64,000 nt of DNA from Ascidiella aspersa (GCA_963924565.1 OZ004608.1:26598001-26662000), one strand, 5' to 3'. Numbered from the stretch's first letter, positions 13,018-32,850 are shown. A program made the numbers and translations. The notes: generated by a model from the letters alone, not told the origin.

Positions 13018-13911
13018 TACTGTCCACGATAACAGCGTGTGTTAAAAGTCTGATAGTAATTGCTGTCATTATACCCGTTGTAATTTTGATCACCTAGAAA
13101 GAATGGCTTTGAGTTTACGGTGTTTGGAAAAATGAAATTAGTTGCTCAACTAGCTAGTATGAGGTACACTTGCCTGATATTTTTGTATTGTTCTTTTTCG
13201 GTTTAGCTCGCTCTTTTATGATATCTGTTTTATGACATCTGTAGGTAATATGTCTATACTACAGTTTTTTGCTCCACTTTTTCTCTGATTTACTGCTATA
13301 TCAATGAGCTGTCACACTTTTTAATGCTACCATTACTTACAAACGTAAAGCAATGACGTAACACTGTTTTCTCCTTAAATAAGTGAAGTAACTATTCGTA
13401 ATTGCAGGCAGTTGTAGTTGTTTATGGAGTTAATCGACGTTAGTTTTTCGACTGTTCAAGTATTCAGTTGTGCAATTATCCATTGTATTTTTTTAATATA
13501 GTCATTTATAAAATCTGAAATGGTAAAATATGTGCACTCTAACCATATCTTAAAATAAGTTAGATATTTTTAATCTTAAGCGGTTTGTGAGACAAGTAGA
13601 CTACTGCAATATTTTTGCGAAAGAGTTAATCCCTATTGGTGATTTTCATTTAAAGATACGTCGAACCAAAACTATCTAATAACAAATATATATTAAAACC
13701 AAAAGGTGATTATTAGAAGCAAAGCTTTATTTATCGCAATAATTATACAGTACATCAATCTCGAAAGTTAGCAAATGGACACGATACAATTTTTCATCTT
13801 AAGCGGTTTGTGAAAATAGTTGACTACTGCAATGTTTTTGGCGAATTTAGCGGTCACTGAACGTTTTAATAAGCACTGATACAAGCAGAGACAATCCAAG
13901 TAAAACAAAGT

Positions 13912-16900
13912 CTACATGTCGGAATTGTCGTAGATCCACTGTCGGACACCGATACCCACTCTTGTGTAGACCCCCGGTTTCTCGGGGTTTGCACAGCCCT
14001 CACCCCAAGAAACGATGCCAGCCAACCACCAGCTTTGAGATGCAGAGCTGCGGTTAATAAAAACGTTTGTAAAAGTTAAACACTATATTTTTTTATTTTT
14101 TTTTGTTTTAGTACACAAATTGGTGTTTAATTAGTCAGGGACCGATCAAATTGATTACAATCAAACAAACTTTAAACGCTAAATTAGTACATAATTTTTT
14201 TAGTCTGTTTCCCCTCCGTGGGCCCATTGATTTAATATTATATCGTTTTGTTGTTTGGCAATCTTGTTTACCAATATTTACAATTTTTTATAGTAGATTT
14301 TAATGTCAGTTTAAAACCTCCTATACTGTCTTGTCTCACTTTGTTAACACTTTCCTAAGGTCATTGCCAGTTTATTTTGTGTGACTGATTTCCATTAATG
14401 GTGACGACAAAATTCGGATAGAACGAATTTTAATTTTAATTTTTCTTGACTTTACACATATACAGAGGATAGTTGCAATATGCACCTCCAAAGGGTAAAA
14501 GGTCCGCCCGAGTCGCCTTTACATGCGTCTTGGATCGAATCGCCACCAGCACAAAACATCAGCTTCGAGAGAGGTTCTGTTAAACGCTTGTTGCAATAGG
14601 AATTCTTTCGAATTGGAAGTTTCACCTGCCAAGAAACCAATACATGACTAACACATCTACAGATTAATTCCAAAATGTCAAGAATTTTATCTTGTTTACA
14701 CTAAGACATTGACATTATACAGATTTCTTATGAAAGTTTATTTAGGTAGTTTTACAGTCGGGTGTGAAGATTTTTTTCAAGATGTATTGTTAGAAATTAT
14801 ACCAGATATAACCTGAAATACTGAACATGTGCAGTAAACGAAACAAAGTAGTTTCAAACCTCTCTTAGAACTCTCTTGTGAGTCCTTTTCTCCGTTAAGC
14901 CGTACCCAAAAACCATGCCGTACTTAAAAGTTCCTTTTTTGCCTGGGCGTGGCTTCAGGTCTGTGGCGTTGTTAGAGGAATGTGGAACGCACAAGGGCTG
15001 AATAATATATAAGAGAATGTAAAGTAACAAGCAAAAGGCGGTATTTTTGTTTGCATGTATCTTTTTCGTTTGCTTTCTATAATTTCATTCGCGTATAATT
15101 AACTGGTGATATATCTCATTATGTTTGCACCATCAGTAACATCCCCTACTTTGTAAAGAGCTCTTTTTTTGGTCTATCCCAAATGTCTCAGCTCAGTGAA
15201 AGGCAGAAATAAAGTATATAGCTATATAGCCTCCATGTGTACGTTTTACAGCGACCAGGCTCAAACCCCACACAAAACGGATAAAAATCTGCCTACGATA
15301 ACTGACCGCATGTCATTAAATAAGCCTTAAGCTTTTCGTATAATCACACGGTTACGTAAATATACATTAGCGTTGCCTTATACATGTTTTGGCATGCTCC
15401 ACAATGCTATCCAAACTGACTGTGACCAGTCTTACCAAAGAATGGTAAAAGGGAAAATCATAGATTTTAGGAACTGTGCGAAAAATAAACGAAAACAATG
15501 AAAATACGACTTTAATTGCATTTTTAAAAGTAAGTATATACATCTATTCAGTAGGCTACCTTTACACCCTTGGTAAAAATAATTTTCGTTTGCAGTGTAA
15601 TAATGGCGATGTCAGCGTGATAGGATTTCACGTCGTATTCCGGATGAAGCAAAATGTGGCTGATTGTGGCCTGTTGCTGATAGGGCTCGATGTTTCGTAT
15701 GTTGGAATCAAGCTTTCCGGCATAAATCTTAAAATCGGTGGCATTTACGACTGTAGAACAAAGTTATGTAATTGTTATTTGGGTAAAAATCCGATTTGTA
15801 TAGTTATTTATATTAGATATTTTCATAAATTGCAATTGGGTTGAAAGCAGCAGACTGTTAGTGGTTCTACTCAGTTTTGAAAAAAGTTGTACCTATATAA
15901 ATTTATAAGTTGTACCTATATAAATTTGATTATTTTATATTTTTTGATACTCACGTCTCACGCAGTGGGCAGCGGTTACAATGCGGTAAGGTTCGATTAG
16001 ACTTCCACCGCAGAACACACCCTCGTTACCAGGAGTTGTCTGGTAACAAAAATACGATTAGTTTACTTCAGTCGGTTAAAATGTTGCTTAAAAACTACAA
16101 GGAAGCATCTCCCCTAATAAGGTTAGCTTGCGTAAATGACAGGCCTATTAAAGTTATTTCCGGATTTGAAAAACAACAGTTATTTTTAAAGCAAACGCTT
16201 ACGTTAAAGCAGTGCTTTTCAACCCGTAGGACGGTGCGCACTTGTGCGGATGAAAAAAAATTGTAGTGCCGGTGACTAACGCGTCCAGTTTAATGTGCGG
16301 ATGAAAATGGTGCATTTTATTATTTTTATATGTGTAATAATCAAATAATCTGGTGCGCCCACTTATGCGTTACAGATACAGTAATATAGTCTCGTAGTGG
16401 TTCATTGCAGTTTAAGCGATCTATTTTAAATCGGTCGAGGCTTAGGCTCACGGTTTTAATACACAAACCCTTACATTGAAAATAAACTAAAGGAAAAAAC
16501 TAAAAGCTGCAAACTTACTATGCTTGTTTCGTGCGGATGAAAATTTTCCGAAATAAAAAAGTGCGGATGGAAATTTTAAAGGTTGAAAAGCACTGCGTTA
16601 AAGCATTCTGAATTTTGCGTATAAAAATATTTATGTAGTAAATAATTGACAACAAATACAGCTCTATGCTTTACCCATAGGAAAACGCTAATACACGCGT
16701 GCAAAAACTACTAACCCTGTACAAGAAAACCATGAACGGTGCGCCGAACTTGACAACTTGCTGTCCACCAAAAATTCGAGCTTCCTTTTGACGATGTGCG
16801 TTGTTAATTCCCAACGCCCGGCCGCAGACTAAACGAAGTAAAACAAATCGAAAATTTTAGGTTACAAAATCATTACCTACATAGCAAAGCATTATTTGAT

Positions 16901-19900
16901 TGTGTTTGTCACTGTTAGTTAGTAGCCTACTGCTGTCACATGTTAAAAAAAAAACAATTTAAACAGACATTGTTCAAAAAAATTGTATTTTATTTCAAGT
17001 TTTTATAGCTTTGCGATGCTTTACTTCTTTGTAGATTATGATGATGGTAAACTTTATTTTAAAAATATGTCTGGTTACCATATTATTGGATTTTTGTTCA
17101 GCATAATTACCAGTCCGAGTTCGCGACTCAATCTCAATCATCCGCCAAGCGTTTAGTTCATTTCCGTCAAACGAGAACTGACACTTGTACTCGCCAGCCT
17201 CTTCGTAGGTCACGTGATACAGGCTTAGTTCTCTTCCGTTGTGATTGATAACCACTTGGTCTTTTCCCTGTTATTGCGTTTAGGTTTGCACGTGGGCCAA
17301 TGTTACTCCATTTGTCGTTACGCGCGGGTTTACACCACTTGTTAAAACTTTTAGTTTTTTTAATTAACAAGAAACATCGAACAAAAAACGTTTTGCGACT
17401 GTTAACTTTGTCATGAATTACCGAAATTAGCATAACGCGTTAAGTGCTCCAGCTCATATATGTCCAACCTTAAGGGGTTGCATTTGGTAATTTTTTCTAT
17501 ATCGAAACTTAAAAATAGGTATTGCATAGATAAAAAATAGTTTAATAGTTGTATAAAATATCCGAACTCTCTAGGTTCGATAAAATATCTCAACACTCCT
17601 AATTCGTTTATTCATGTTCTGCTACATCCTGGGCGCACACGCCAAAGTAATAATAGCCAAGTAAGTAAATTACTCTATAAAGTCTCAGAATTTAGGTAAA
17701 GTCCAAATTGCTATATTTCCACAATATGTTGATTATTGCAATATATACTCCGCTTTTAGATTAAATTTCAATATGTACAATTCAATTCTTACGCTGATAA
17801 GCTCGTTGCGATTCCTGAACCAAATAATCTTGGCGGTGACCTGTGGAGGTATGACGCAAGTGAGAACGAACGACGATCCGCTCACTATCTTGCCGGTAAT
17901 GCTCACCGCAATTTCGCCGTACGCTTTGGCACAATTAATACCCCTGAATCGACACAAGTATTTGGGGGCATGTTTATTGTTAGTGGTGGTATGACATGTT
18001 TTTGCAAAAATCACTTTATAGCGCTTTGTGCGTGAATTACCCATGTTGTAAGAGCATGACGTAACTGCCTTTAAAGAATAACCTTGTTTTATTGGACTTG
18101 TGTAAGTTAATTAGACGAATCAATCAACTTTTTCCAAAAAATAATACAAATTAGAAAATATAATACAAATTACTTTGAACAGTTGCATGGACGGTGAAAT
18201 TTCAACAGTTTAAAAAGACTTTTCATCTTGGGTCAGTTTGGTCCATAATATGTAAAACTTTCGAAATTCGTATGATAAAATGGTTACAGCAAATCGGGAC
18301 TTCCGATAATATCGGTTTGGAGCCTACCTGATATCAAATGGTACTGTCGGTACTCGTCCGATACTAGGGTGTTATCTGTACCGATCCGATACCAAATTAA
18401 TATAGGGATTTAGGCCAAGGTTTGCGATTTAACGCAGTGACTTCTACCCTCAAGGATGAATTTATCAACAAACAAAAACAAAAGGTCAACAATTCGAGGT
18501 ATCTAAACTTCTTCTTTACTTCTTTCCGCTAAAAATCTTTTCGCCTAGATACCCGAAAAAGTTACTGTTCATGGTTTCAATTTTATCTTATTGCTTATTA
18601 TAAAAAAAAATGACGTCATTGGTATCGAATCCGATTGCAGTACTTTTTGTCCAAAATATCGGTTATCGGTATCAAAATAAAATGTCAAGTATCGGACCAT
18701 ATTAACTACAAACATAGTTTACCTGAAACCTTGCGTACATTCACATACGTATCCACGCTCGTTCGATGCCAAAACGCAAACTCCGGCATGTTTACAAGGA
18801 TTGTTGGTGCATACGTTAACTACTCAAAGAAAAAAATACAGATTACACCTTGTTTACCAAGACAATACAAGTCATCTACGTTTGTCTATCATTATTGACA
18901 AATTTTCTAACCAATTTTGGTGCAAGTCTTTCCGTCGGAATTCAATTCATATCCCTCGTTGCAATCACAGTGAAAGCTTCCGACTGTATTGACGCACACC
19001 TACATAAATGTGTTTATTGTCTGAACGAATAATCTTAGGAAAATAAGAACGAATAATCTTTAGGAAAATAAAGGTATTGTACTTTCTACAACCCTTCGCC
19101 TCTTATCACTGTATAGCAATGTCGTTTATGTATGTCCGTTACAGTTTTACCTTTTGGTAACAACAAAACAATAAGGCCGAGATTTGCCGAATTGAGCGGG
19201 GTTAGTTTGACCCATTTAATGAGTTCACGGCATATACAGTATACGACGCAAGTAGCGTCACCCTGTAGGTAATATCTTAAAAGGTAAAAAAAAACGTTTA
19301 CAAGTGCCTTTAATTACAGATATGCGACACAGGTTTACTAACTTGTTGGCAACCTCCTTTTTCCGTTAGACAATCATTGATGTCTTCACATCGATCTAAC
19401 TGTGGACTTGGCTGAAATCCGTCGTTGCAGCTGGTCACTGTACACCAGGGTTACATGTTTAGTGCCAGTAAAGGTTTAGAATTAGATTCAAAAGTTGAAT
19501 AGTTACTCAAATCCACATGCGGTTCAAGGCATGAAAGGTTGTATGTACAACGTGTCTGGGAAACACCAAGTAACTGTTCTCTTGTTATTAGGTTCGTGCT
19601 TCGTGGAATAATTTGCATTTTGGTATTTTGGGGGGTAATAAAAGATCAGTTACTGTTTTACTGTTCAATAAATTAGACATACATTTTACATGTCATAACA
19701 TTTTAACGGTCGGGATACAGACTATACGGCGTTTTGTGTAAGTAGCCCTGCTGTATACAATAAAACATCTAATTCTAAAGTATAAGTGTATAGCCTTGCA
19801 GTAAAATATGATAAGGGCGATAAAAGTCCAATTAACTTAAAAAAATTAGGCCTTAAACTATGTGTAGCCTAAATGCAATTTTGTGTATTCTTTTACAAGG

Positions 19901-22900
19901 GCAATCTACGGAAATAAGTTAACGAAAAACCTAATAAAAGTTCTACCTTTGGATCCCATTCCGTCGGCAATGTCTTCCCTGCACTCGCGAAGTTGCGAGA
20001 CCTTGGACCGGAAAAGGTCAGGACACATGCACTTTGCACGGGTGGTTCCCCCAAAAGCAGGGACAATAACACAAAGATGACTACACGAATTACCAGCGCA
20101 ACGGTTTTCAACTGAATAAAAGAAGAAACGAAAATGGACTACAGTCATAACACCGAAATAAGAACAACATCAACGTCGGAAAAAAACACACTTATCAATA
20201 AGACCAAAATAGGACTAATACCTAATAGTCGTAAAACCGTCTAATTTGGAATAGCCTCTAAGTTCTAAATCGGTCGGAATAAGACCTAAATAGTCAGAAT
20301 CAGGTATATACAAGTCCTAAACAAAGCCCACCTTAAATACATGACCAATTCCCCTATAATAATTTTAATCCTTCCTACCCCAACAGTTTCAGGCGTTATT
20401 TTGGCCTTTAGGACCTATTCCGACAGGTTTAGGTTTTTATATATTATCCTGTCGTGGATATTACAGAAAATTTGACTTTATTACGTCGTTGGTCTTAATG
20501 CTATGGTATTATAGATTATTCGGCATTAAATATTGTTGCTTTGAGTCTTATGGCGTGTTTCCAATAAAGTCTGAGACTGAAGGATCGTTTGTTATGTTTA
20601 TCATCTCCATAAGTGGGCAGAATGCCATTGCACTAAAATTTTAAGAGTATACCCTGTATACAGGTCGGTTCTTGGGTTTGCCAAACTTTCTAGGTTAGCT
20701 TAATTAAATATAGCTACATCTGTAAACATTTTGTTGTACAAGTATGTGCGTTTGTAGCAACTTACAAGCAAGGTTTGCGTGTAGGTTGTTGAGGATTGAA
20801 ATTCCAGTCGGTCTTTGTAACCCGCTCACCACACCCCGAACGCCATTGCCGTTGGTTTTGTTGCAGGTCATGATGTGTTTACCAAGCCAGTCCGTGTAGT
20901 ACACTAAAAGGTCATGAAAGCACTAAATCAGGCAAATCGCTAGTTTTGAAAATACACCATGATTTTTTTTAATTTTGCAGAAATTTGTAGATGTCAATTC
21001 GAATTGGATACCATGAGGTACCCGATGATATCCTGCCGACCAGACACCGAAATAATGAGGTATTTCAGTCATTATTTGTGATCTAATCAAGCCAAGCGTT
21101 TTTTACCCTAAAAGTATGCTCAATAAAATGCGTTTTCTTACTTTAAAACTTAAAAAAATAAAAGTGAAAGATATAGCCAATATGTCAATATTGAGCGTAC
21201 AAAAGAGGTAAACGAACTTACATCGGTCGTGGTAAACAGCCACACCATACGGATGTGGAGCGAATTTTTGCGATTGCACAAGAACGCGCGGATCGGATCC
21301 GTCGAAGTTGCACGAAGTGATCGAATCCAGCTTGGCGTCCACCCAAATCATACGCTCGTCTTCAAAATCTTTCAGAACAAAGAAAAAAGTAATCGAGCAA
21401 ACGAACAACAATAAAGTTTATCGGTTCAGTTTTGTAGAACATACAGGTTTCGAAAAATATTTGTCAATTCTATACAAATTTGTCCCAGCAGACTAAAAAA
21501 TTACGAAATTCTCTTATCCAATATAACAAGATTTTTGCTTTTAGAACCTTTTTAAAACATATTAGGAAACAAAAACGACAGCCAGTTGAATTTTCCATAA
21601 AGGCTATATTCGTTTAGAATTTGCAACTTTTGCTAACAATGCAAACAATTGCAAAGCCATAAAAAATTAATTGAACCTTAAACAACTTTAGGAGTAGAAT
21701 AAATTCGGCAAAATATATAGTAATGTCCAATAAAAGAGATATTGTTTGTTTTTGGAAAGAATTGTTTGTTTTTTTGGTTAAAATATTTCTAAAAAAACTT
21801 TCAACTCAATGTTTGCCGATGCGCCGTACCGCTGAAAATGTGGTTCTTTTCAATAGAAATATGTTCATTTTTCACCAGGCCATTTCATCATCCGCTTGAA
21901 TGTATTAGTCTCTTTAAAAGTAAGTTGCATATTTGTCTATACTAGACCCGACGATAACTTTAGGTTGTTATAAGATTTCTTGTTTTAGACGACGCGTCAT
22001 CTCTAAAACATTTCTTGCGTTTCGGTAAGCAAATGATTCATTGTTTCGATAAGAATATTATTCTACTTTTTCCCCTGATGACTCAAATTCGTAATCATTT
22101 ACCGGGTACCACATTGGAAGTAACTATACTGTTATTAAAACCAGTTGGCCTAAACTGGATTGTAGTACAAGCAAATTATTTTTTTTGAATAATTTTAATG
22201 TGTAAACAACTTTTTACAACAATTATAGTTGCTAAAAGTGGTAGAAAAAGTGGTACACCTAATGGCAGGTTGGCAGCAGAGGTTTATATAAATTACCTAA
22301 AACTAATCCATTAGGCCATCGAATGTTCACTATCACAATGGTGGTACAGGAACTCCCGTCCATCCAACAACGTTCTATCTTCGGCTCACTTCCCCAATCG
22401 GAAACGAATATCCATCTGGTTAATACAAAATGCTCCGATAAATCTGTTTTCGAAAACGACCTTAGAGTTTATCAATAAATAAACGCAACATAGTTAAAGG
22501 GGAACAAACTGCTGTTTAAAAACAAAAAAACGTTTGTTAACAATTGTGATAAACTTCACGACTTAGAGATCATACGATTCTATTGTTTTCCAGGTTGAAA
22601 CAAAAATACATTTTTGACGCAAGTAGACCATACTAAAGCATAACAGGATTGAACGAGAAGGCATGGTTGAGGCCAAACCGTTTCACTCCTACGGAATGTA
22701 TTTCAAGCAAAACGAAAAGAACAACGTTTACGCCTAAAAAGCGCGTTTACCCGCTTTACCAGCAGCTGAAAGTCAAAGCCTAAAAAATCCAGTATCACTT
22801 ACCCTTCACCGGGATGAGTAGCAATCGCTCGCGGTTTATAAGTTGCGTTCCGAGCAAAAACCGTAGTAACGAAAGTCTCATCGCGAGCCACACTCAGCTT

Positions 22901-25900
22901 GGTCATGAACACTGAGTGCAGCTGTACGTCTGTCCAGTAGAGGTTGGCGCTGATCCAATCAACTGCGATGCCGTCGGCCAAACGCAGGTAGGATGAGTTG
23001 GCCGATCCGTGGAGAAGCGTCTCCGATCGGATCAGGTTATGCTTTTCTCCCAAATAAGCTCTAAAACGGTTTGCGGCGATATCGGTCGATCGGTGATTAT
23101 TTGATATATCTAAACCTTTATTTGTTTATAGTTTATACCAGTGTTTCCCAACCTTTTTGACACTAGTGCCCCCTTGGGCTAAATATTATTTCATATCGCC
23201 CCCCTTATCTTGCTTTACAGTAAAGTATCATATTAATCGTTGTCTAACATCATATCGTCTGCACTTTTGTTTCGATAAGCTGTCCGCAATATTTTAGGTT
23301 GTCTAACATACATTCACTATAGGAATTTATGGATAAATTAATTCACCAGGTTATGTCATTACGAGGAAATATTCAACTTTCTGGACCAATACTATCAGGG
23401 GTCGGCAACCTTTTCTTGTCACGGGCACCAATCAAACTCAGAAAGGTCTCTGTGGGCCGCACAAAATGTTAGCTAAGAATTGTGTTATTGGAATGTTAGA
23501 ACAACTGTGAATCAGGCGGACCTCGGATTTTTTTCATCCATACTACTAATGAAAAGTGTAATAAAACTATAGTTTGAGGAAACGCGATAACCGTAGTGTT
23601 TATAGATAGTGTAATTCAGTGTTTGTTAAGCTCTTTAAGTCCTGGCGCACCTGGCGAGCGAAGCGAGCGCAATATTTTTGGGGTATACCAACATTTCTTT
23701 TAAATTTCGTGCTAGTATTTATTACATTGCCGAAAAAAATCAAAAAATGTTAAAAAATATATGTCTAATACTTTTGAATACGTTTTCCTTTTGTCCGCAA
23801 CCGTAAAAAAGTGCTAATCTATTCCAAAGACAGCATTAAAGTGTAAACAAACTGGACGTAGAAAGATCATTGTCGCGAAGCGCGAAAATTTTTTGCCCGT
23901 AACAAGTTAAAATCGTCAAAAAGTATTTAAAATGGACTCGTGTCAAGTTGTTAAAGAGGTGGAGGGCCGTAAGTTGGCGACCCATTGCTTTAAATATACA
24001 AACATTTTGCCGCGTATAAAACTGTGAAACGCAACAACAACCAACAACTTTACATAAGAAAGTCAATTATTACGTAATAATGGTCGGAAAACTACTACAA
24101 GTTCGCAGTACAAAAGTTGCCATTTAAGGTTAAAAGTTACCTACAGTCCTGTTTGTTACTATTTTTATATGAACTTTTTGTAAAATTTAGCCTATAAGTA
24201 CTTTTATGTAACGCCCCCTTATGTGCATTCAGCGCCCCCTAAATTAGAAACAGACCCAAAACGCCCCCTTGTAACTCGCCAACGCCCACAAGGGGGCGGT
24301 ACCGCCCACGTTGGGAACCTCTGGTTTATACGGTCTTCGTCGAGTAAATTGGGTTAATTTCGCATTCACTGCAAGGAACACTTTAAAGCGGTCTAAATTG
24401 TAAAATAGTGTACGTGTGGAAACTATACACTGGCATATCACACTCAAAAATCCATTTTCCAAACAATTTTGTTTAAATTCTCGATTATAATAGTTATATA
24501 AGTTTTGTCAAATAGTCTGAACCTGTCTCGTGCGTAACAGTAGTTTTGCATTGTGAATATGGTGACTTTTAAATGCATCAAATTATTATAGCACGATTGT
24601 TGGACAAGAAATGTCTGCTGTACTAAAATGATTTATATTTTTGACATTTTTATCCAACAGTTCTCCCATGCAGACATACACGTCGCGCAAGTCAGGCTAT
24701 GTAAGTTACAGTGTTTATTTACTAATTAATTGTAAGTTTCCTCCTGTAAACTCGTCACATCACTATTTAACATGTCACTTTAGCTGTTTATGCGGTTTAA
24801 AACCTTTTTGATTTCATATACCATTATTGAAATAATATACCGGGATATGGTCTTTGTTGTGCCAGTTGTCCAATACACAGCGCTGTTCACTGGGTCGTAC
24901 GTTAAACCGATAACGTTGTTGAGATTGGTTATGAGATTCTTACCTCTTCCAGATCTACACAGGAGAGGTTAACGTTAAGCAAATGTACTTTCGTACACAA
25001 GTAACATTTTCGACAAAATGTGCTACGGTATGTACATAAGTATAAGCATCAACTTCAGTTGTGTTTTAAACTTAATTAAACAAGATTAGACAAGAAATAA
25101 GATAAATGAGAAGATTACTCGCATCAAGCATCGCTCGGGGCAGTTACAAGTTTTCCAACAACACATAATGCGGTCAAAAGGCCAGCGTCAATTTTAAATC
25201 ATCTCTTTCACATTGGAGTTACACAACAACGCTAAGCGAAAGATAGTTTAAAACCCTCGCAATACAGAGTGGGCCAAATGTAGGCTTACAGTTATAGAAA
25301 GTAGGGTGGGTTTAAAAGTAAATTTATTGTTTTGGGGTTCTTCTCATACACCTTGTTCTTTACAACACCTCAAAAAAGAAATCCATTGGTGTCAGGTCAG
25401 GTGAGTGTGGTAGCCATTCAATGCTACCTCTTCTTCCAAGCCAATGTTGTGGAATAACTGTAAGCCTACATTTGGCCTACCCTGTATATTCATAAAGAAA
25501 TCCTTGGAAAAAATTAGTTTTCAAAAGCATTCTAAAATCACTAAAACATCAGTAAGACAGAAAAAAATGCGGTCGATGTTCACCTACCTGGTGTTCCAGT
25601 TATAGTGGAAGGTTTGTATTTTGTTAAGGTCGGCGGCGACAATGTCAACCACGGATCCGGGCGGGGGTTGGGTGGGCGCCAATTTCACGCAGTTTGAGTT
25701 GTCATCGGAGGTCGGTTGGTAGCCGTTTGGGCACGCGCACTGGTAGCCTTTGTTAATGTCGGCCAGGCACAAGTATTGGCACGGGCTGTCGGCGCAACGG
25801 TTCGGACCTTTATCGGAAAATATGCTCTTTAGAATAGCGCCAGTTTAAAGAATATTTCTAAAAAGAATATTCTATGCAAAAATTTCAGGCGTTTGACCTT

Positions 25901-28900
25901 TGTCTGGCATGCAGTGAATACTGTATGATATTTTCAATAATAGCGGATCGGATCCGCCCGATACCAAGTAGTATATTATTAGTACTAGTCTGATGCTGGG
26001 GTTGTATCGGTGCCGATGCAATACTAAACTATTCTAGGCATTTCAGTCATAATTGCCGATCCAACACAGTTATTATTAAAAATAGAAATTTATTAAAAAT
26101 AGTAGATTAACAACTGTAGGTATAGCTAAACTAATTAACACAAAACCAAATTTTGACGAAAATATCTGGAAAAAGTATTTTTAAACTTTCCAATTTTCAA
26201 CACATTTTACAAAAAACTACTATGTCATAGTTTAGTTTAGCCGAACGGCCAAACGTTTACAAGAGTAAGTTTTTATACTCGTAGGCTGGCGTTTTGGGTC
26301 GACGGCCTTGATTTGGCCGGCCGATTTGATTCCTCCAATGAGAAGACGAAGGTTGGCTCCTGTTTTATCAACGCTGTAGATGCCCATTCCATCCCGGTTG
26401 GTCCAGTAAACTGGAATTTAGAAGGAACTTTACTTTTTGCATTATTCTTATTCTAATTTCTTATTACTTTTTCGATTGTTTTGTTATGTGATATATTTTA
26501 AATGTTAGAACATCGATTCGGACTTTTTATATCATTCATTTTATTGCGATTTACTCACGTCTATTTTCCGACAGCGTCAGTCCGACTGGAAGGTTTGCAA
26601 CCCTTTTGCCATTAACAAGATCTACCATTCCAGAGCCGTCGTACAGACACGAGCTGATCTTGTGACCCAAAGCATCCGTCCAATACAGCCTTCTCGTCGG
26701 CAAATAGTCTGCGCAAAATTTAAATGAAATTATAGCTGGCTTAACTCGTGCTACAAATTTTTCGTTATTTAGTTTAGTCCTTTGCAACCGTTTTTACTTG
26801 AGCTGAATCGATTTGCCGGTACATCTGCGAAATATGTGTCGATCGCCAATAACAACAGCGAATTAATATTCAAGGAAGCTTAGAGAAACAAACCGATTTA
26901 TGATTAAAGGCACCTAAGGCGTCAAATATGTGACGTATATTTTGCGATTGACTACAGGTTTAAAGAAAGTGATTGTCTGTTGCAAATTTATTTTTCCTAG
27001 TAGCGTTAAAATGACTTATTTCGATGTTTTTAAATGACTTGACTTGACTTAAATCTATTGGAAAATGATTTGAATTGAAACAAAATGCTTCCATTTAGCA
27101 ATTATGTATAAAATTGTGTTATTTATGTTAATTTTTGAACATAAAACAATTTGCTTGCTATATGTTGCGTTTAAGTTATTTTTTAACTGAGTTATTCCTC
27201 ACAAACGGTCAAGTTTGACAGTTGTAAGTTTTAATAGTATAACGTTTTCCTTGTATGACATTAAGTACTTGACTTGATCTAATTATGACTTGACTGGGAC
27301 TTGACTTGTCATTTATTCGAAAAGACTTAAATTGAACTTGTTAGTTTACGAATATTTTGCGAATGACTTCAATGAGATTTAAGTTTTTTTTAAATAATGA
27401 CTTGTTTACATCACTATATACTTGTCGATTGAAGTTTAATATGGATTTAAAAAAATGTTAAAGTTACACCTGGATTCGTTGCATCAGGTCAAAATGACTA
27501 CCTGGATAAAATGTACATTTTTCGTGTTAATTATTTTAAATTTGAGTTTGCTAATTATATCATTTTAGTAGCATTTGTTATGTTTTGAATTTTCTGAATA
27601 GAGATGATACTCTAACATTCTGTACAACCTTCGAATGGTATTCATAAATAAAAATAGTTTGACCATTACTGAATCAAACACTATTTCGCAGACGACAGAT
27701 AAAGATGTCGTGAGTATGTTTAGATTTAGGCCCTGTGATATTTGTGACATTAAACCTATAAATAACGTGTCGTATGGTTTTTATCGGATTAGGCAGAAAT
27801 CAATTGTATAGCCTTTAGATAAGATATTTCTAAATATTCCCACCGATTGCTAGTCCGGTCACCAATTTAAGGTTGGTAAACACAATCGTAGTGCACGTAT
27901 CACCTCCAACCATTGAGCACTTTTCGATTTTAGGTGCACCACCTCCGTCGCTGATAAACATCAACCTGAAATTAAAACAGTGTTCTATAAAGAATGCAAA
28001 TTCTAAAATAAGCTTTGAAACAAATTAAATTATTTCCTTTTTAGGTACATAATTCCGACGCGAAAAAAATCTTTCATTTCGTGTATGAACAGAAATACCC
28101 ATTTTCCGGGTCCAGCTCTATCGCCCTCGGTGAAAATCCTTTGTCTCTTTTTATCAGAGTTTTAGGTTCAGTTGAGGTAGTGGCCAACACCATTACAGTA
28201 TGGTGACCTCCATCAGTCCAATACAGGTTCTGATGAATCCAGTCAATGGCTATTCCTTGAACAGTCAGGACCTGTTGAGTAAATTTTACGTTATTTTGCA
28301 AAAGTGGTACAAAGAAGCAATCTTTTACTCCATTGATATTTTGTTTTGAGAGATAATTTATTAGCCAATTTTAGTTGAATGTCGTTGGGAGCTAAACATG
28401 GGCAGCGTTTGTCTTTTTCTGTGTTTTAAACCTTAATCTAGCGAGTTTGGTAAAGCGCCGCAACAACTTGAAATGTTTTATATTCAGAATAAATCCTAAA
28501 GTCACAAATCACATTTAAACCGTAGAGATATGGAAATAAAAAAGTTTTAGGCTTCTTTGTGGTTGGGTAGAATTTTGCTAAATTCTAGTTGTTTTTTTCA
28601 ATCCGATGTTTAGTTGTAACATTTTGGTATTATTTCAAATTCGTTTCATTTTAGACCAATTTTTTGTTCTGTTTTCTTTTTTGAATATGGCCTTCTGCTG
28701 AACCGTCCTACCGTTGCATCGTGTTGGAGTCTCTTGAACGATGTTGGCACGATGTTGTTCGTTACGTACGATACACTAAAACAAAAAAATAAAAAAAGTT
28801 CTTGCATTTTATGACATTAATTTTCGAGACAGATAAATCGTTTTCAAACAAAATGACCTTATCGTCATACGTGAAAAATAAGTTGTTACTCAAATTAATT

Positions 28901-29136
28901 ATTGACCTTAAAAATGTTTTATTTTTGTCAGCTTATAGCTTAAAACGCGTATCGAACACACAAAATTACATAAATACACCAGTACTGCAATCACTTTTAT
29001 TGTATTTAGCATCACATGTATTTACCTGATTATCTGGCGCAGTTTCGCATCAGCACAGTATATTATTTTTCGCTTTAGGTCAATGTCCAAAACCGCGGTG
29101 TGCTTTAAACCGTTCACGATGTATTTTATACCCACA
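13912..29136 (-). CDS. Mosaic trypsin-like (S1A) serine protease: 2x(YWTD beta-propeller + EGF), partial EGF, calcium-binding EGF, EGF, Ig, trypsin domain; no TM segment seen
   Basis: 24 in-frame GT-AG exons: 29136-29026, 28775-28712, 28271-28099, 27965-27844, 26708-26559, 26410-26279, 25807-25588, 24954-24841, 23060-22803, 22415-22297, 21368-21222, 20903-20766, 20111-19947, 19437-19343, 18999-18912, 18819-18723, 17943-17793, 17267-17111, 16828-16716, 16039-15955, 15750-15560, 14997-14860, 14625-14486, 14047-13912 (3304 nt, TAG stop). Motifs: [30 protein letters not shown]; cb[21 protein letters not shown]; Ig LTC..IIWFRN..EAGEYKC; activation site CGR...EAR|IFGG; [36 protein letters not shown]. 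Confidence 0.9.
16210..16595. mobile_element. hAT-type MITE in a protease intron
   Basis: TIRs CAGTGCTTTTCAACC / GGTTGAAAAGCACTG; TSD CGTTAAAG; four GTGCGGATG subterminal repeats. Confidence 0.9.
23139..24323. mobile_element. hAT-type non-autonomous element containing a further truncated hAT end near 23397
   Basis: TIRs CAGTGTTTCCCAAC / GTTGGGAACCTCTG; TSD GTTTATAC; GCCCCC subterminal repeats; internal CAGGGGTCGGCAACC end. Confidence 0.8.
25265..25484. mobile_element. Tc1/mariner-type MITE
   Basis: About 31-bp TIRs CAGAGTGGGCCAAATGTAGGCTTACAGTTAT / ATAACTGTAAGCCTACATTTGGCCTACCCTG, flanked by TA. Confidence 0.85.
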
Positions 29137-29566
29137 CTAAAAAAGAATAAAATTGGTAACTGTCGGCATTATACCAGCCTAAAAAATAATATAAATCACT
29201 ATCGTAGTATGGCAAATTAGTCAATACCTCGCATACTTTGGCTTTACTCAAACAACATAAAATAAACTTGAGATTGTTGATTTTCAATAGTTAGTTGATT
29301 TTCAATATTTAAGTTGTATATTCTAACGGTAAAGAAGAATACTTTTATTTAAGTATAATTTTTGACCTCTATATTTTAGTTACATCTTAAAGCTCACAGA
29401 CATACATTTGCTAGTTATGTTCAACATTATAAGGACACTATAAATCGATACATGTACTGCTCTAGAATACACTATTTGCTTAATTTTCACGTATTTTTAT
29501 ACAGTAGCTTTTTTAACGGAGGCACATGTAAAGGCGTTCGGTAGTCTGTCTACCTGCAATAGAAGT

Positions 29567-30435
29567 CAGGGGCGGGACCATGATTTATTCCAGGAATGAC
29601 GTCACAAAGTTAATTACGTCACACCCTCGTAAAACAAATATTCTAAAGAACACTTGTTTCACAAGCGAACTCGTGCAAAAAAGGCAGCTCAAATCCGGTT
29701 TATTTGAGCGAAGCGAAACATATGCGGTTATTTGGTTTAAATAGGTTAACAAAAAGTTGGCTTATATGGTCAAGGTTAATGTGAAACCCCTTGCTTTAAA
29801 ACATATGGTGATTTCATGACAAAAAAATGGGGAAAGTATTTTTAAATGACAACCTTTGGTTTAGTTTATACAACGTAAAATAAAAGACTTCTATAACTGT
29901 TATAAAAATAACATCATATAAACCCTATTGTGGTTGTGCCATTTACTACCGAAACGTATAATTAAAAGAAATAAGTGTTATATTATTTCCAAAGAAGTTG
30001 TTTTCCACAGGAAAAAAAATATATCTAAATAAAGATTTTAAACTTACTTAGGAACGTAACGACCGATTTGTTTTGTATTCGAAAACACAAACTTGGGAAT
30101 TGCATCCTTACGCAGTAATTCTGTATAACAAAAACAATAAAATTAGAAAACAAAACGTAAAAATGGCACATATCCCTCGAATTAAGAGTTTCAGCCATTT
30201 CAATGAATTTACTGTAAAAATTTTCGTTGGTACGCCGTATGAAAAGCAAAGTTTTCTCACTAGGTCATGACCCTATTTTACCATGGAAAATCGCCATCTC
30301 CTTTACTGTTTTAAACAACGATTTCAGTTAAATATTTTTAACGATATGGAATATGAATCACAGAAGGTTGGGCCTACTTGTTTTAGACGTCCCTTTATGA
30401 CGTAATTTTGTGACGTTATGTCTGAAAATTTCATG
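29567..30435. mobile_element. Probable non-autonomous DNA transposon remnant
   Basis: Imperfect inverted repeats of about 40 bp at 29579-29621 and 30398-30435 (CATG...GACGTCACAAA..TTACGTCA); GAGCGAAGCGA motif shared with other MITEs here. No clean TSD. Confidence 0.5.
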
Positions 30436-30749
30436 TTTTTTGACAATTATTTTTTCCATCGTTTTAGTACGAAAAGTGTTCCACTTCCGTCGCTGGTTGT
30501 TATTTACTGACACTAACGAATAAATTTTAAACCAATTGAAATTTCTATCGCTGGGTGCGTCACAAATCCAACATGATAATTATTTTTAAAAGCGCCACAA
30601 TAATCACAATGAGGATCACAGCTAAATTAAGTCAATGCAACACTGCAGTATAGTATTACACGTTTACGATCGCCTTAACGTACAGGTTTATGCATTATAG
30701 TTTATGCATTATAACACACAACGTAGGCGATGGTCGGTTGACATCTTAC

Positions 30750-32283
30750 TTGAGATCGTGAAAGCCCCGACCGCTTCCGCTTTAGCCTTAGACGTTATTC
30801 CTTTTTGAGTGGAGCTGGAATAGACGGCTGGAGCGGCGGTCGACGTGACTTGGATTGATCCTGGTCGACCCACTGTAAACATTCCGAATATTTTAACTAC
30901 GGCTAAACTCCAGTCCAACGATTTTTTGTAAAAAAGTTTTTTTGAATTTGGTGTAAAATTAATTAAATCATTTAAGTTGAGCTGCAGCGTTTAATAGAAA
31001 ACTAAAAAAGTTGAGTAATACTACTTCAAGTAGCAATTAGAATACAAGAATATTTAATCATCTAAAATATTGTTTTTTGAAAGTTTAAATTTCGAAATAC
31101 TAAAATATTACATGGGGCAACTCTTGTAGCAAACAAAATCAGTTATCCCCACATGACAGTAAATACACTGCGGATCAACAGCAAGTGTTCTTATCAAGTT
31201 AAATGCAAATTTTTAAAAATGTGTTTCTGAACAGCTTCACTCACACGGCAGCACGGCGCTGTGAAAGGCGGCAGCGCAAACGAAGGAATCGAGCGAGTAG
31301 ACTTTATTGGATCCCCACAACCGCTTGTACACGTTTCTACAGGAGGCGGGGCAATCGACGGAGAACGGCAAAGGAAAGCTGTTGCCTTTTGTGTAGCAAA
31401 TCGCGTCGCCTGAATTTAGGTGAAAGGCAAAGGTTAAAATGCTATTAGTTTTTTTTTGTTTGTTTGTTTTTTGTTTTAGGGGTAGGGGGTGCTCATAGAC
31501 TGTTTTTTTTTGTAGTTGGTGTCTTTACGATGTCCCCTGTTTTTGTGTTGTTTTGTTTTAGTGTTCACTTAGTTATGTCGTAAAAGTGTTAATAACAAAA
31601 AAAGTTTAACTCAATTTTGTATTTTAGAAATACATAAACCACTAACGTTTTTCAACAAAAAATATTTTACGATATAAATCACCAGAGAAGCTGTGTTTTA
31701 TGTTTTTTTGATTTAAACACACCTGTACAGTTGGTGCAAATCGAAAGTCGGGTTCTTCCTCCTGGAAGAACTTCCATTGGGCACCAACGGGTGCCAGGAA
31801 CGGGAAAGTAGTTTCCGACAGTGGTGCACTCTGTGTACGTCTTGCCATTCACTCGAAACGGAACAACACATCGTTCACCGTCGGCATTACACACAGAGTC
31901 TGCAAGTGTCAACGTAACTCTTCTCGTTACAAGGTTTAAACTTGTATAGCTTTTGTATTCGAATTACAAACGTATAAAGTGCATTTCTGAACAATTAATA
32001 TTAATTGCAATCGAGAAAGCTTCGAAATTAGATATATTTTAAAACCGTTTTAGGGCTTTGTCTGTAGGTTTGCGAAGTTTGTTTATTTAAACAGCTAAAC
32101 TTAAAGAGTCGGCCTAAATATTAAGGAAAATGTTCAGTTCTGGATAGCTGTTCCCACCTCTTGTACCAACAATCATTGGTAAATAAAAAATATCAATAAT
32201 TAAAATAATTTTGACTTACCGAAGGCAAATGCAGCCTGCACTGCCACAAAAAGTACAGAAAAGAACGTTATACAGTGCGACAT
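30750..32283 (-). CDS. Signal peptide + fibronectin type II-like domain + LCCL domain; probably the 5' end of the mosaic protease, alternatively a small separate protein
   Basis: Exons: 32283-32220 (MSHCITFFSVLFVAVQAAFAF, signal peptide); 31899-31723 (CVVPFRVNGKTYTECTTVG...RWCP, FN2 pattern); 31409-31245 (VDCPASC...LWGSNKVYSLDSFVCAAAFHSAVL) and 30872-30750 (GSIQVTSTAAPAVYSSSTQKGITSK...AFTIS), which together match the LCCL consensus. All junctions are phase 1 and GT-AG. Confidence 0.8.
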
Positions 32284-32850
32284 TTCTAACGTTTAGACCC
32301 GCACTTCATATAGGCAGTTAGCTTCTGTTAGCTTTCAAGACGCCTTTGCTAAGCCTCGAACACAAAATGCCCGAGAGGTTTTCGAAAGTTGTTTGTCTCA
32401 TCGATAAATTGTTTGATTGCCCGAGGCTTTCGAGAATAACGGGACTCTCCAATGCCAGAAAACTTCAACGCACACAAACTGGCTGAATAAATTTCCATTT
32501 ATCAGAAAAACATGCCGCCCAACAATTGACACACATGACTTATTTTCAGACATTATACTTTTTTGAAATAAATCTAATCTTGATTTAATAACAGTTAAGC
32601 AAAAAAGTTAAAACAAAATGATAGAATGGTTGTAGAATATAAACGAGTCAAAAGAGTTTAGCTGGAACCAGTTCTAGCAATTGGTGTGCTACCAGACGTC
32701 TATTCATAGGGGTGCTGTACCAAAAAAAGTAACATACAACCTTGTAACCTTGTCTCCCCAAATAAGCTTCGTTTGGTAAAGTTGGAAAAAGTACATTAGC
32801 ATACACAAAGTTGTTTTCCACACGTGTATTGTTGATAGAATTATCAAACA

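What the first reader, a model, noticed from the sequence alone, without database searches (positions are those of the whole stretch)
13912..32283. Secreted mosaic protease with an unusual FN2-LCCL-(YWTD propeller-EGF)x2-EGF-Ig-trypsin architecture
Seen in sequence: signal peptide, FN2-like and LCCL exons, then on the same strand 24 in-frame exons ending in an intact trypsin domain. That domain has a complete His/Asp/Ser triad, Asp189-type S1 pocket ([10 protein letters not shown]), R|IFGG zymogen site, and linker Cys plus PLC for a two-chain disulfide. No TM segment or LDL-A repeats were found; the joined protein would be about 1290 aa. Established: LCCL plus a trypsin domain occurs in horseshoe crab Factor C, an LPS-triggered protease; FN2 occurs in factor XII/HGFA; YWTD propeller-EGF modules are ligand platforms in LRP/nidogen/proEGF; an LDLR-module-containing modular protease (TRAMP) is known from a budding ascidian, with a different domain set as I recall. 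Inference: I do not recognise this combination in any characterised protein. It could be a tunicate-specific sensor-effector zymogen starting a proteolytic cascade (innate immunity, tunic or wound clotting, or fertilisation).
Basis: partly seen in the sequence, partly recalled or inferred. Interest (0 to 1): 0.8.

Follow-up and report, generated by a model that had tools for sequence, protein, structure and literature searches.

The report
Sea squirt mosaic serine protease gene
This is a real, expressed sea-squirt gene for a secreted protease with an unusual set of binding domains, but the same protein is already in public databases for other sea squirts (Ciona "sp7"), where no function has been shown.

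Summary
I curated 29 GT-AG exons with consistent phases, from the ATG at 32283 to the TAG at 13914-13912, giving 1307 codons. The order is signal peptide, FN2-like, LCCL, two YWTD propellers each followed by an EGF, further EGFs, Ig, then an intact trypsin domain.

RNA-type data cover exons only. They show the FN2/LCCL-a and exon 10/11 splices directly. The key LCCL-to-propeller junction (exons 4/5) rests on depth arithmetic, phase fit, the absence of any exon between, and orthologues.

The domain combination is not new. Styela clava XP_039272637 ("LRP2-like"), Ciona intestinalis "sp7 protein precursor" (NP_001027831/CAH39865) and Ciona savignyi H2ZDZ1 have the same collinear architecture. In one search, 4 of 57 long proteases carried LCCL + YWTD + trypsin, and all four were ascidian.

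I found no paper on sp7 or on this architecture. The scan's earlier notes list other mosaic proteases in this genome, but not this gene.

Best reading: an ascidian-conserved secreted zymogen, cleaved at Arg|Ile into a disulfide-linked two-chain enzyme that cuts after Arg/Lys. Its physiological role is unknown. It is a new member of a catalogued but uncharacterised family, of modest interest.

The parts
32220..32355 (-). Exon 1: 5' UTR (RNA-type contig reaches 32355), ATG at 32283, signal peptide (aa 1-21), phase-1 donor at 32220. A 7-codon uORF starts at 32309, and an in-frame TAA lies 12 nt before the ATG.
   Evidence: X3 contig piece 32220-32355 ends exactly at the donor (table 8).
31723..31899 (-). 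Exon 2: FN2-like module (aa 22-80), phase 1-1, four-Cys pattern.
   Evidence: Pfam fn2 E 9.1e-6, 26 bits against a cut-off of 22.2. The splice to exon 3 is shown by X3 loose ends at 31722 and 31412. tblastn to Styela P0066 residues 32-85.
31245..31409 (-). Exon 3: LCCL first half (aa 81-135), phase 1-1.
   Evidence: Pfam LCCL E 1.5e-8. 51-53% identity to both Ciona orthologues.
30750..30872 (-). Exon 4: LCCL second half (aa 136-176), phase 1-1.
   Evidence: No Pfam hit alone. It aligns to the LCCL tail of the Ciona proteins. X3 depth arithmetic places its start at about 30872.
30048..30120 (-). Exon 5: start of propeller 1 (aa 177-200), 73 nt, phase 1 to 2. This is the exon that links the LCCL part to the propeller-protease part.
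   Evidence: Strong acceptor and donor. The X3 depth in bin 30046-30242 equals about 73 nt at the contig depth of about 57. X3 depth is zero in bins 30243-30636.
29026..29136 (-). Exon 6: propeller 1 blade 1 (aa 201-237).
   Evidence: (depth).
28712..28775 (-). Exon 7: propeller 1 (aa 238-259).
   Evidence: Covered by RNA-type depth. The frame was chosen by phase fit with exons 6 and 8 and by likeness to the Ciona sequence.
28099..28271 (-). Exon 8: propeller 1, YWTD blade (aa 260-316).
   Evidence: Pfam Ldl_recept_b E 5.3e-7. X3 contig piece 28097-28272.
27844..27965 (-). Exon 9: propeller 1 (aa 317-357).
   Evidence: tblastn 40-47% identity to orthologues. X3 depth 22.8-24.7.
26559..26708 (-). 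Exon 10: propeller 1, YWTD blade (aa 358-407).
   Evidence: X3 contig piece 26559-26708. Its loose end continues into the first bases of exon 11.
26261..26410 (-). Exon 11: propeller 1, last blade (aa 408-457).
   Evidence: The splice from exon 10 is shown by the X3 loose end at 26559.
25588..25807 (-). Exon 12: EGF after propeller 1, then start of propeller 2 (aa 458-530).
   Evidence: Pfam EGF-type hits just below cut-off. Collinear with Styela residues 460-511.
24841..24954 (-). Exon 13: propeller 2 blade (aa 531-568).
22803..23060 (-). Exon 14: propeller 2, YWTD blade (aa 569-654).
   Evidence: Pfam Ldl_recept_b E 1.6e-5. This piece was the query.
22297..22415 (-). Exon 15: propeller 2 (aa 655-694).
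   Evidence: Pfam Ldl_recept_b E 4.1e-7. 58% identity to C. intestinalis.
21222..21368 (-). Exon 16: propeller 2 (aa 695-743).
   Evidence: Pfam Ldl_recept_b E 1.7e-4.
20766..20903 (-). Exon 17: propeller 2, last blade (aa 744-789).
19947..20111 (-). Exon 18: EGF after propeller 2 (aa 790-844). A donor at 19910 paired with an acceptor at 19430 is an equally in-frame alternative.
   Evidence: 44-45% identity to the Ciona proteins.
19343..19437 (-). Exon 19: cEGF remnant plus first half of the calcium-binding EGF (aa 845-876).
   Evidence: Pfam cEGF, sub-threshold.
18912..18999 (-). Exon 20: second half of EGF_CA (aa 877-905).
   Evidence: Pfam EGF_CA 34.4 bits against a cut-off of 27; FXa_inhibition 38.1 bits.
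18723..18819 (-). Exon 21: EGF (aa 906-937).
   Evidence: Pfam EGF E 7.2e-7.
17793..17943 (-). Exon 22: Ig domain, first half (aa 938-988).
   Evidence: Pfam Ig_2/Ig_3, sub-threshold. It aligns to the Ig_3 region of Ciona sp7. Acceptor read.
17111..17267 (-). Exon 23: Ig domain, second half (aa 989-1040).
   Evidence: 41-42% identity to the Ciona proteins.
16716..16828 (-). Exon 24: linker Cys, activation site Arg|Ile (R at 16778-16776, I at 16775-16773), N-terminus of the protease (aa 1041-1078).
15955..16039 (-). Exon 25: His57 loop, TAAHC (His at 15967-15965) (aa 1079-1106).
   Evidence: Pfam Trypsin E 2.1e-7.
15560..15750 (-). Exon 26: Asp102 in a DIAI context (aa 1107-1170). An alternative in-frame donor lies 6 nt upstream, at 15566.
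   Evidence: Pfam Trypsin E 5.3e-6. Best PDB hit MASP-1, E 9e-4.
14860..14997 (-). Exon 27: PLC (Cys122 equivalent) (aa 1171-1216). The donor, GTTTGA, is weak.
   Evidence: No Pfam hit alone. The boundary was fixed by homology to the orthologues.
14486..14625 (-). Exon 28: Asp189 (14529-14527) and Ser195 (TCG, 14511-14509) (aa 1217-1262).
   Evidence: Pfam Trypsin E 3.8e-9. 65% identity to Styela.
13912..14047 (-). Exon 29: Ser214 (TCT), Gly216, Cys220, Pro225, C-terminus, TAG stop at 13914-13912 (aa 1263-1307).
   Evidence: Pfam Trypsin E 7.7e-7.
13726..13731 (-). First AATAAA after the stop codon, a candidate poly(A) signal. It is a consensus match only.
   Evidence: The motif has 164 matches in the window against 144 expected by chance, so it is not evidence by itself.

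Best explanation
This is one 29-exon gene on the minus strand (32283 to 13912). It is the orthologue, in this sea squirt, of Ciona 'sp7' and of Styela clava XP_039272637. It encodes a secreted 1307-aa zymogen.

Shown:
- An intact open reading frame across 29 GT-AG exons.
- Expression.
- Domain content.
- A complete catalytic apparatus.
- Collinear orthologues in two ascidian orders.

Inferred from established S1-protease chemistry:
- The signal peptide is removed.
- An upstream Arg-specific protease, or the enzyme itself, cuts the Arg|Ile bond in exon 24.
- The new Ile N-terminus forms the oxyanion-hole salt bridge next to Ser195.
- The catalytic chain stays tied to the N-terminal non-catalytic chain of about 1070 aa by a disulfide between the linker Cys and the PLC Cys.
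- Asp189 gives cleavage after Arg/Lys.

Inferred more loosely: the FN2, LCCL, tandem YWTD propeller-EGF, EGF_CA/EGF and Ig modules place the enzyme on a ligand, matrix or surface and restrict its substrates. This is how non-catalytic modules work in clotting and complement proteases. Which ligand, and which physiological process, is unknown.
For: Gene model: all 28 introns are GT-AG, exon phases fit, there is no internal stop, and the total is 3924 nt.

Domains were confirmed exon by exon.

RNA:
- In the RNA run X4, reads lie in 10 exon-containing bins, always with the first mate on +. That means a minus-strand transcript in the usual stranded library.
- X3 contigs cover exons at a depth of about 57 and have depth 0 in 7 intronic bins.
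- X3 loose ends show the splices of exons 2/3 and 10/11.
- X3 contig ends coincide with the exon 1 donor (32220), and with the exon 8 and exon 10 limits to within 1-2 nt.
- Depth arithmetic fits exon 4 (start 30872), exon 5 (73 nt) and exon 6 (start 29136).

One gene rather than two:
- The exon 4 donor is phase 1, and exon 5 runs from phase 1 to phase 2, which matches exon 6.
- There is no RNA-covered exon between 30750 and 30120.
- Exons 5-7 contain no Met, so there is no alternative start.

Orthologues:
- P0066 (Styela) has fn2 + LCCL + Ldl_recept_b + EGF + Trypsin.
- P0242 (Ciona sp7) and P0239 (C. savignyi) have LCCL + Ldl_recept_b + EGF_CA + Ig_3 + Trypsin. P0242 also has a separate EGF hit.
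- Most exons align collinearly to these proteins. Several short or repeat-blade exons (for example 4, 5, 7, 11 and 17) align only weakly or off-line in one or more orthologues.

The activation site (basic residue, then I/V-x-G-G) and the D-A-C-x-G-D-S-G-G-P motif are visible in all three orthologue sequences printed.

Own-genome search: 5 of 27 matches lie in this gene, and I saw no second collinear cluster.
Against: - The exon 4 to exon 5 junction was not seen directly. No such row is among the joints printed by read laying, 52 rows were not printed, and the RNA depth there is below the 3-read listing threshold.
- Exons 11-29 have no RNA evidence from this genome, because only 26500-32400 was laid.
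- Three boundaries are uncertain: exon 18/19, the exon 26 donor and the weak exon 27 donor.
- X3 is of unrecorded library type. I call it RNA-like only from its exon-only depth.
- The signal peptide, the disulfide, activation and specificity are inferred from sequence, not measured.
- I could not see the nucleotide record behind CAH39865. That it is cDNA-derived rests on the NP_ accession convention, which I am recalling.
Confidence: 0.78

Rival explanations
1. There are two adjacent genes: a small secreted FN2-LCCL protein (exons 1-4) and a separate propeller-EGF-Ig-protease gene (exons 5-29).
For: The exon 4/5 splice was not seen directly. The intron is 629 nt and the two parts are different module types.
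Against: Phases fit (1 into 1, out at 2). There is no Met or signal peptide in exons 5-7. X3 and X4 have zero depth between the two exons, so no extra first or last exon is seen. X3 depth is about the same (about 57) on both sides. Four database proteins from three other ascidian species carry both parts in one chain.
Confidence: 0.05
2. It is an LRP-type endocytic receptor, as the automatic names ('low-density lipoprotein receptor-related protein 2-like') suggest.
For: The propeller-EGF pairs of the Styela orthologue match LRP2 residues 411-1021 best among solved structures. The top hits are LRP proteins.
Against: None of the 27 pieces hit Ldl_recept_a, and neither did the orthologues. The frame ends right after the protease domain, with no TM segment or tail. 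The name reflects only the YWTD part.
Confidence: 0.02
3. It is a decaying or inactive copy: a pseudogene or a pseudo-protease used only as a binding protein.
For: One weak donor (GTTTGA at exon 27). Several exon pieces have no Pfam hit. Non-synonymous variants are present in exon 1 and exon 3.
Against: There is no stop or frameshift in 1307 codons. The triad, Asp189, the oxyanion Gly, the activation site and all paired cysteines are intact. It is expressed. The same residues are kept in Styela and both Ciona species.
Confidence: 0.03
4. Functional rival: it is a developmental or matrix-remodelling protease (tunic, budding, metamorphosis or ligand processing) rather than an immune or clotting cascade initiator. 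The propellers would bind matrix or signalling ligands, as they do in nidogen and LRP4/5/6.
For: The YWTD-EGF pairs are most like LRP2/4/6. Another ascidian modular protease, TRAMP, is reported as a growth-promoting, retinoic-acid-induced factor (passages read in PMC8270879).
Against: There are no expression-site, ligand or substrate data here, so nothing separates this from the immune reading. TRAMP's own domains could not be checked.
Confidence: 0.4

Closest known systems
Ciona intestinalis 'sp7 protein precursor' / putative serine protease 7 (NP_001027831.1, CAH39865.1, Q659T9; newer model XP_078484835.1), and Ciona savignyi H2ZDZ1
   Same: The order is the same: signal peptide, FN2-like four-Cys module, LCCL, two YWTD propellers with EGFs, EGF_CA, EGF, Ig and trypsin. 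Most window exons are collinear with them, the better-conserved ones at about 25-65% identity. Both have an Arg|Ile-type activation site, Asp189, and the linker Cys plus PLC.
   Different: The Ciona proteins are 1235-1266 aa against 1307 aa here. Pfam does not call fn2 in them at E <= 0.001. No publication on them was found.
Styela clava XP_039272637 (named 'LRP2-like', later 'uncharacterized protein LOC120346911')
   Same: The full set, including a Pfam-significant fn2 (E 1.1e-8), LCCL, Ldl_recept_b, EGF and Trypsin, in 1286 aa. The last two protease exons are 55-65% identical.
   Different: Its activation site is Lys|Val rather than Arg|Ile (sequence printed). It is a gene prediction only.
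Horseshoe-crab factor C (LPS-triggered clotting zymogen). Its domain set is recalled, not looked up here.
   Same: A secreted mosaic zymogen that combines LCCL with a C-terminal trypsin-like domain and EGF. It becomes a two-chain enzyme after cleavage.
   Different: Factor C has sushi/CCP repeats and a C-type lectin domain, and has no YWTD propellers, FN2 or Ig. No Sushi or lectin hit was found in any piece here. The likeness is in logic, not in family.
Vertebrate factor IX / factor X
   Same: The protease domain of the Styela orthologue matches factor IX and factor X best among solved proteases (E about 1e-43 to 1e-41). An EGF_CA-EGF pair precedes the protease, and the product is a two-chain disulfide-linked enzyme.
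   Different: There is no Gla domain. An Ig domain sits between the EGFs and the protease. Residue 225 is Pro and Ser195/Ser214 use TCN codons. As I recall the marker scheme (Krem and Di Cera), vitamin-K-dependent factors carry Tyr/Phe225.
LRP2/LRP4/LRP6 YWTD propeller-EGF units
   Same: There are two six-blade-sized propellers, each followed by an EGF. The best solved match is LRP2 residues 411-1021.
   Different: There are no LDL-A repeats, no TM segment and no cytoplasmic tail. The propellers are fused to a protease.
TRAMP, the retinoic-acid-inducible modular protease of Polyandrocarpa misakiensis (Ohashi et al. 1999, PMID 10491255)
   Same: An ascidian secreted modular serine protease (passages citing it were read in PMC8270879 and PMC3293724).
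   Different: Its domain set and sequence could not be seen, because the paper is not held. No Polyandrocarpa protein appeared among the hits. Those calls list only proteins of 707-2250 aa, so this argues only weakly against orthology.

Membership tests
Peptidase S1 (chymotrypsin fold), catalytically competent, trypsin-like specificity | His57, Asp102 and Ser195 in the TAAHC, DI(A/T)L-type and GDSGGP contexts | tested here: met
   Pfam Trypsin is above cut-off in 4 of 6 protease pieces.
Peptidase S1 (chymotrypsin fold), catalytically competent, trypsin-like specificity | Asp189 at the base of S1, Gly216 and Gly226 | tested here: met
   D-A-C-K-G-D-S in exon 28; SWGEGC and PGVY in exon 29.
Peptidase S1 (chymotrypsin fold), catalytically competent, trypsin-like specificity | Zymogen activation bond (basic residue | I/V-x-G-G), and measured activity | tested here: inconclusive
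   The motif R|IFGG is present. Cleavage and activity cannot be tested with these tools.
Ascidian sp7-type LCCL-YWTD-trypsin proteases (database family, uncharacterised) | Same domain order over the full length, and collinear alignment | tested here: met
   Pfam on orthologues; per-exon alignment.
Ascidian sp7-type LCCL-YWTD-trypsin proteases (database family, uncharacterised) | Single-copy orthology and shared synteny | tested here: inconclusive
   The own-genome search shows no second collinear cluster (counts are lower bounds).
LDL-receptor-related proteins (LRP) | LDL-A (complement-type) ligand-binding repeats | tested here: not met
   No Ldl_recept_a hit in 27 pieces or in P0066, P0053, P0242 and P0239.
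LDL-receptor-related proteins (LRP) | Transmembrane segment and cytoplasmic tail | tested here: not met
   The frame stops right after the protease domain.
Limulus factor C family | Sushi/CCP repeats and a C-type lectin domain together with LCCL and trypsin (feature list recalled) | tested here: not met
   LCCL and Trypsin are present, with no Sushi or Lectin_C hit.
Vitamin-K-dependent clotting proteases (FVII/FIX/FX/protein C) | N-terminal Gla domain | tested here: not met
   No Gla hit. The N-terminus is FN2-LCCL.
TRAMP (Polyandrocarpa) | Sequence or domain identity with the published TRAMP cDNA | not testable with these tools

The most novel reading that the evidence does not exclude
Ascidians may have their own humoral recognition protease. 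In this reading the tandem LRP-type propellers, with LCCL and FN2, act as the sensing platform for microbial, tunic or damaged-self ligands. Binding would trigger autoactivation at the Arg|Ile bond and start a lineage-specific proteolytic cascade. That would be an independent invention of the factor C / MASP logic, built from different modules. It would be old enough to predate the split of Phlebobranchia and Stolidobranchia.
Probability: 0.12. Interest if true: 0.6.

Novelty: new member of a known kind. Interest (0 to 1): 0.3.

Why it matters
The gene is a clean, expressed example of exon-shuffled module assembly: the first four exons are all phase 1-1. It is conserved across two ascidian orders, with every catalytic and activation residue kept, so it very likely does something under selection. 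Yet I found no paper that describes it, and automatic annotation misnames it as an LRP.

It is a reasonable candidate when looking for tunicate-specific extracellular protease cascades, because tunicates lack the vertebrate clotting set. The architecture itself is not a discovery, since it has been deposited for Ciona as sp7.

Tried and rejected
- Plus-strand reading. No protease or propeller motif is found on the plus strand, so the gene is on the minus strand.
- Automatic exon chaining. A score that favoured length over-extended exons into introns. A score that favoured homology cut poorly conserved exons short. I curated boundaries by hand from both runs, the RNA-type contig ends and the orthologues.
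- Exon 7 frame. The first frame I chose did not fit the phases on either side. The other frame fits, and it matches Ciona better.
- Representative search with exon 14. It gave 497 hits, dominated by LRPs whose many propellers sum to high scores, and no identical protein. I scanned 8 of the 150 listed hits with Pfam, choosing them by length (1079-1294 aa). Of these, 2 (P0066, P0053) have LCCL + YWTD + Trypsin and 6 do not. The other 142 were not scanned.
- Whole-protein search with P0066: 82 hits, and only the query itself has LCCL + Trypsin.
- N-terminal region search: only the query itself, among 82 candidates.
- Protease-region search: 57 hits. Four carry LCCL + YWTD + Trypsin, and all four are ascidian. 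One hemichordate protein (P0039) has YWTD + Trypsin in a different order and without LCCL. I rejected it as an orthologue.
- Literature. None found a paper on Ciona sp7, its accessions, or LCCL + YWTD proteases in tunicates. The hits for 'serine protease 7' refer to Drosophila Sp7. The Botryllus coagulation-gene paper has none of the six domain terms. Only the open-access library was searched. Supplementary files were not requested and are closed, so gene lists there could name sp7.
- Structure prediction was not run, because the joined model may not be folded and the orthologue P0066 exceeds the size limit.

Full report
WHAT IS THERE

The window has no N and is AT-rich, with short open pieces. 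I listed stop-free pieces on the minus strand and scanned 27 of them with Pfam, one piece at a time.
- 12 pieces carry a family above Pfam's curated cut-off: fn2 (E 9.1e-6), LCCL (1.5e-8), Ldl_recept_b in four pieces (5.3e-7 to 1.7e-4), EGF-type in two, and Trypsin in four (3.8e-9 to 5.3e-6).
- 5 pieces have only sub-threshold hits. These include both Ig pieces and the first post-propeller EGF.
- 10 pieces have no hit.
- No piece hit Ldl_recept_a, Sushi, Gla or a lectin.

GENE MODEL

Two automatic chainings gave over-long and over-short exons. I therefore curated boundaries from splice signals, RNA-type contig ends and orthologue alignments. The result is 29 exons and 28 GT-AG introns of 92-1780 nt. 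Phases are consistent throughout, there is no internal stop, and the total is 3924 nt including TAG, giving 1307 aa.

Exons 2, 3 and 4 (FN2, LCCL-a, LCCL-b) are all phase 1-1, the classic signature of shuffled modules. An in-frame TAA lies 12 nt before the ATG.

The domain order is:
- signal peptide
- FN2-like
- LCCL (two exons)
- propeller 1 (exons 5-11)
- EGF (exon 12)
- propeller 2 (exons 12-17)
- EGF (exon 18)
- a cEGF remnant and EGF_CA (exons 19-20)
- EGF (exon 21)
- Ig (exons 22-23)
- linker and activation site (exon 24)
- trypsin domain (exons 24-29)

Three boundaries remain uncertain: exon 18/19 (two in-frame solutions), the exon 26 donor (6 nt apart) and a weak GTTTGA donor at exon 27, which was fixed by homology only. 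I did not search or fold the joined 1307-aa model.

THE PROTEASE

The following are present:
- His in TAAHC.
- Asp in a DIAI context.
- Ser195 (TCG) in GDSGGP.
- Asp189 six residues before Ser195.
- Ser214 (TCT), Gly216, Cys220 and Pro225.
- The activation bond R|IFGG.
- A Cys at the first full codon of exon 24, and PLC in exon 27 for the inter-chain disulfide.

There is no unpaired Cys at the 136/201 positions. The TCN/TCN/Pro225 marker set is, as I recall the Krem and Di Cera scheme, the older type and unlike vitamin-K-dependent factors. Per-exon PDB searches give only generic S1 matches: MASP-1 and kallikrein-6 for exon 26, and clotting, kallikrein and trypsin proteases for exon 28.

EXPRESSION AND THE ONE-GENE QUESTION

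One run search gave three runs of unrecorded type (X1-X3) and one RNA run of the same species label (X4). I laid all four on 26500-32400, which is 5,901 letters.
- X1 and X2 cover everything evenly, so they are DNA-like.
- X3 covers exons at a contig depth of about 57. It has depth 0 in seven intronic bins, so I treat it as RNA-like.
- In X4, with about 6% of the run read, 88 reads were laid. Outside a repeat, reads fall in 10 exon-containing bins only, at depth 0.36-2.34, and all have the first mate on +. That fits a minus-strand RNA. The bins holding exons 1, 9 and 10 have no X4 read.

Direct splice evidence comes from X3. Loose ends at 31722 and 31412 join exon 2 to exon 3. The loose end at 26559 continues with the first bases of exon 11. 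Contig pieces end at 32220, 28097/28272 and 26559/26708.

Depth arithmetic on X3 reproduces exon 4 (39 nt in the upper bin, so a start at 30872), exon 5 (73 nt) and exon 6 (76 nt in the upper bin, so a start at 29136).

The decisive exon 4/5 junction is not among the printed rows. 52 joint rows were not shown, and RNA depth there is below the 3-read threshold. It is supported indirectly:
- the phases fit;
- there is no covered exon between the two;
- depth is equal on both sides;
- there is no Met in exons 5-7;
- the orthologues carry both parts in one chain.

Exons 11-29 have no RNA evidence from this genome.

RELATIVES

A search of 1.84 billion representatives with the exon 14 piece gave 497 hits, mostly LRPs. 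Pfam on 8 length-matched hits found two with LCCL + YWTD + Trypsin. A word-indexed search with the protease region of one of them (P0066, Styela clava) gave 57 hits. Four of these carry LCCL + Ldl_recept_b + Trypsin:
- Styela clava XP_039272637;
- Ciona savignyi H2ZDZ1;
- two Ciona intestinalis entries for one gene: XP_026690454, and 'sp7 protein precursor' NP_001027831 / CAH39865 / Q659T9, with a newer model XP_078484835.

Pfam on these confirms the same order, including Ig_3. tblastn and per-exon alignments are collinear for most exons from FN2 to the C-terminus. The better-conserved exons are about 25-65% identical. Several short or repeat-blade exons align only weakly or off-line, and no orthologue segment is left without an exon.

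Styela is a stolidobranch and Ciona a phlebobranch, so the gene predates that split. A hemichordate protein (P0039) has Ig-Trypsin followed by VWC, Sushi, EGF and YWTD. That is a different order and it lacks LCCL, so I do not count it. Searches with the whole Styela protein and with its FN2-LCCL region found nothing further.

In the window's own genome (308.6 Mb), 5 of 27 matches to P0066 are this gene. The rest are scattered single-domain hits. Against solved structures, the Styela propellers match LRP2 411-1021 and its protease matches factor IX and factor X best.

LITERATURE

Nine searches of the open library found no paper on Ciona sp7, on its accessions, or on an LCCL + YWTD protease in tunicates. 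I read passages only, in PMC2527998 (none of six domain terms), PMC3878950 (Drosophila Sp7), PMC8270879, PMC7606891 and PMC3293724 (these cite TRAMP without listing its domains). The TRAMP paper itself is not held. Supplements are closed and were not requested, so gene tables there might list sp7.

HOW IT MOST LIKELY WORKS

It is a secreted zymogen. After signal-peptide removal, a protease with Arg specificity, or the enzyme itself, cuts R|I in exon 24. The new N-terminus switches the active site on. The catalytic chain stays disulfide-bound to the large N-terminal chain. The enzyme cuts after Arg/Lys. The FN2, LCCL, propeller-EGF, EGF_CA/EGF and Ig modules tether it and choose its partners.

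These steps follow from conserved residues and from general S1-protease knowledge. None was measured. Whether it serves immunity or clotting-like reactions, tunic or matrix remodelling, development or fertilisation cannot be decided from these data.

VERDICT

It is a new member of an already deposited, uncharacterised ascidian family that automatic annotation mislabels as 'LRP2-like'. Earlier notes of this scan show that this genome holds many other mosaic proteases. None of them is this gene.

Noticed in passing
window 33024-33098 and 33372-33446, minus strand: Two tRNA-Ala genes sit in a tandem duplication of about 348 bp, 0.7-1.1 kb upstream of the protease gene's start. One has anticodon AGC. 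The other has GGC, an anticodon that as I recall eukaryotes usually lack. Both score well in Rfam (50.4 and 47.9 bits).
   Followed up: partly
window about 26900-27480 (intron 9): A very high-copy repeat. The summed contig depth is 2e4-9e4 in the DNA-like runs, against about 50-130 beside it. There are many internal-deletion joints, and RNA reads lie on both strands. It is probably a short mobile element family and was not classified.
   Followed up: partly
window 32309-32286, minus strand: A seven-codon upstream ORF in the 5' UTR, out of frame with the main ATG.
   Followed up: no
window 31338, 31351, 31378 (exon 3); 32241, 32258 (exon 1): Variants seen in other runs of the same species label. 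In the LCCL exon two are synonymous and one is Ser>Arg, at about half depth in X3. Two in the signal peptide are non-synonymous, in X2.
   Followed up: partly
window 48232-48381 and 45299-45776, minus strand: Weak tblastn matches of the orthologues' EGF regions. This suggests another EGF-containing gene about 13-16 kb upstream of this one.
   Followed up: no
protein P0011 (83 aa, from a 3,002-nt Logan contig): A fragment 62% identical to exon 14. It is closer than the Ciona or Styela orthologues and probably comes from a nearer relative's orthologue. The source is not named.
   Followed up: no
protein P0039 (Glandiceps talaboti, 1677 aa, 'LRP5-like'): A hemichordate prediction with Ig-Trypsin at the N-terminus followed by VWC, Sushi, EGF and YWTD propellers. 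It is either a different mosaic protease or a fused gene model.
   Followed up: partly
window about 13790-13830 and 13570-13610, minus strand: A stretch of about 40 nt is repeated twice downstream of the stop codon, in the 3' UTR region.
   Followed up: no
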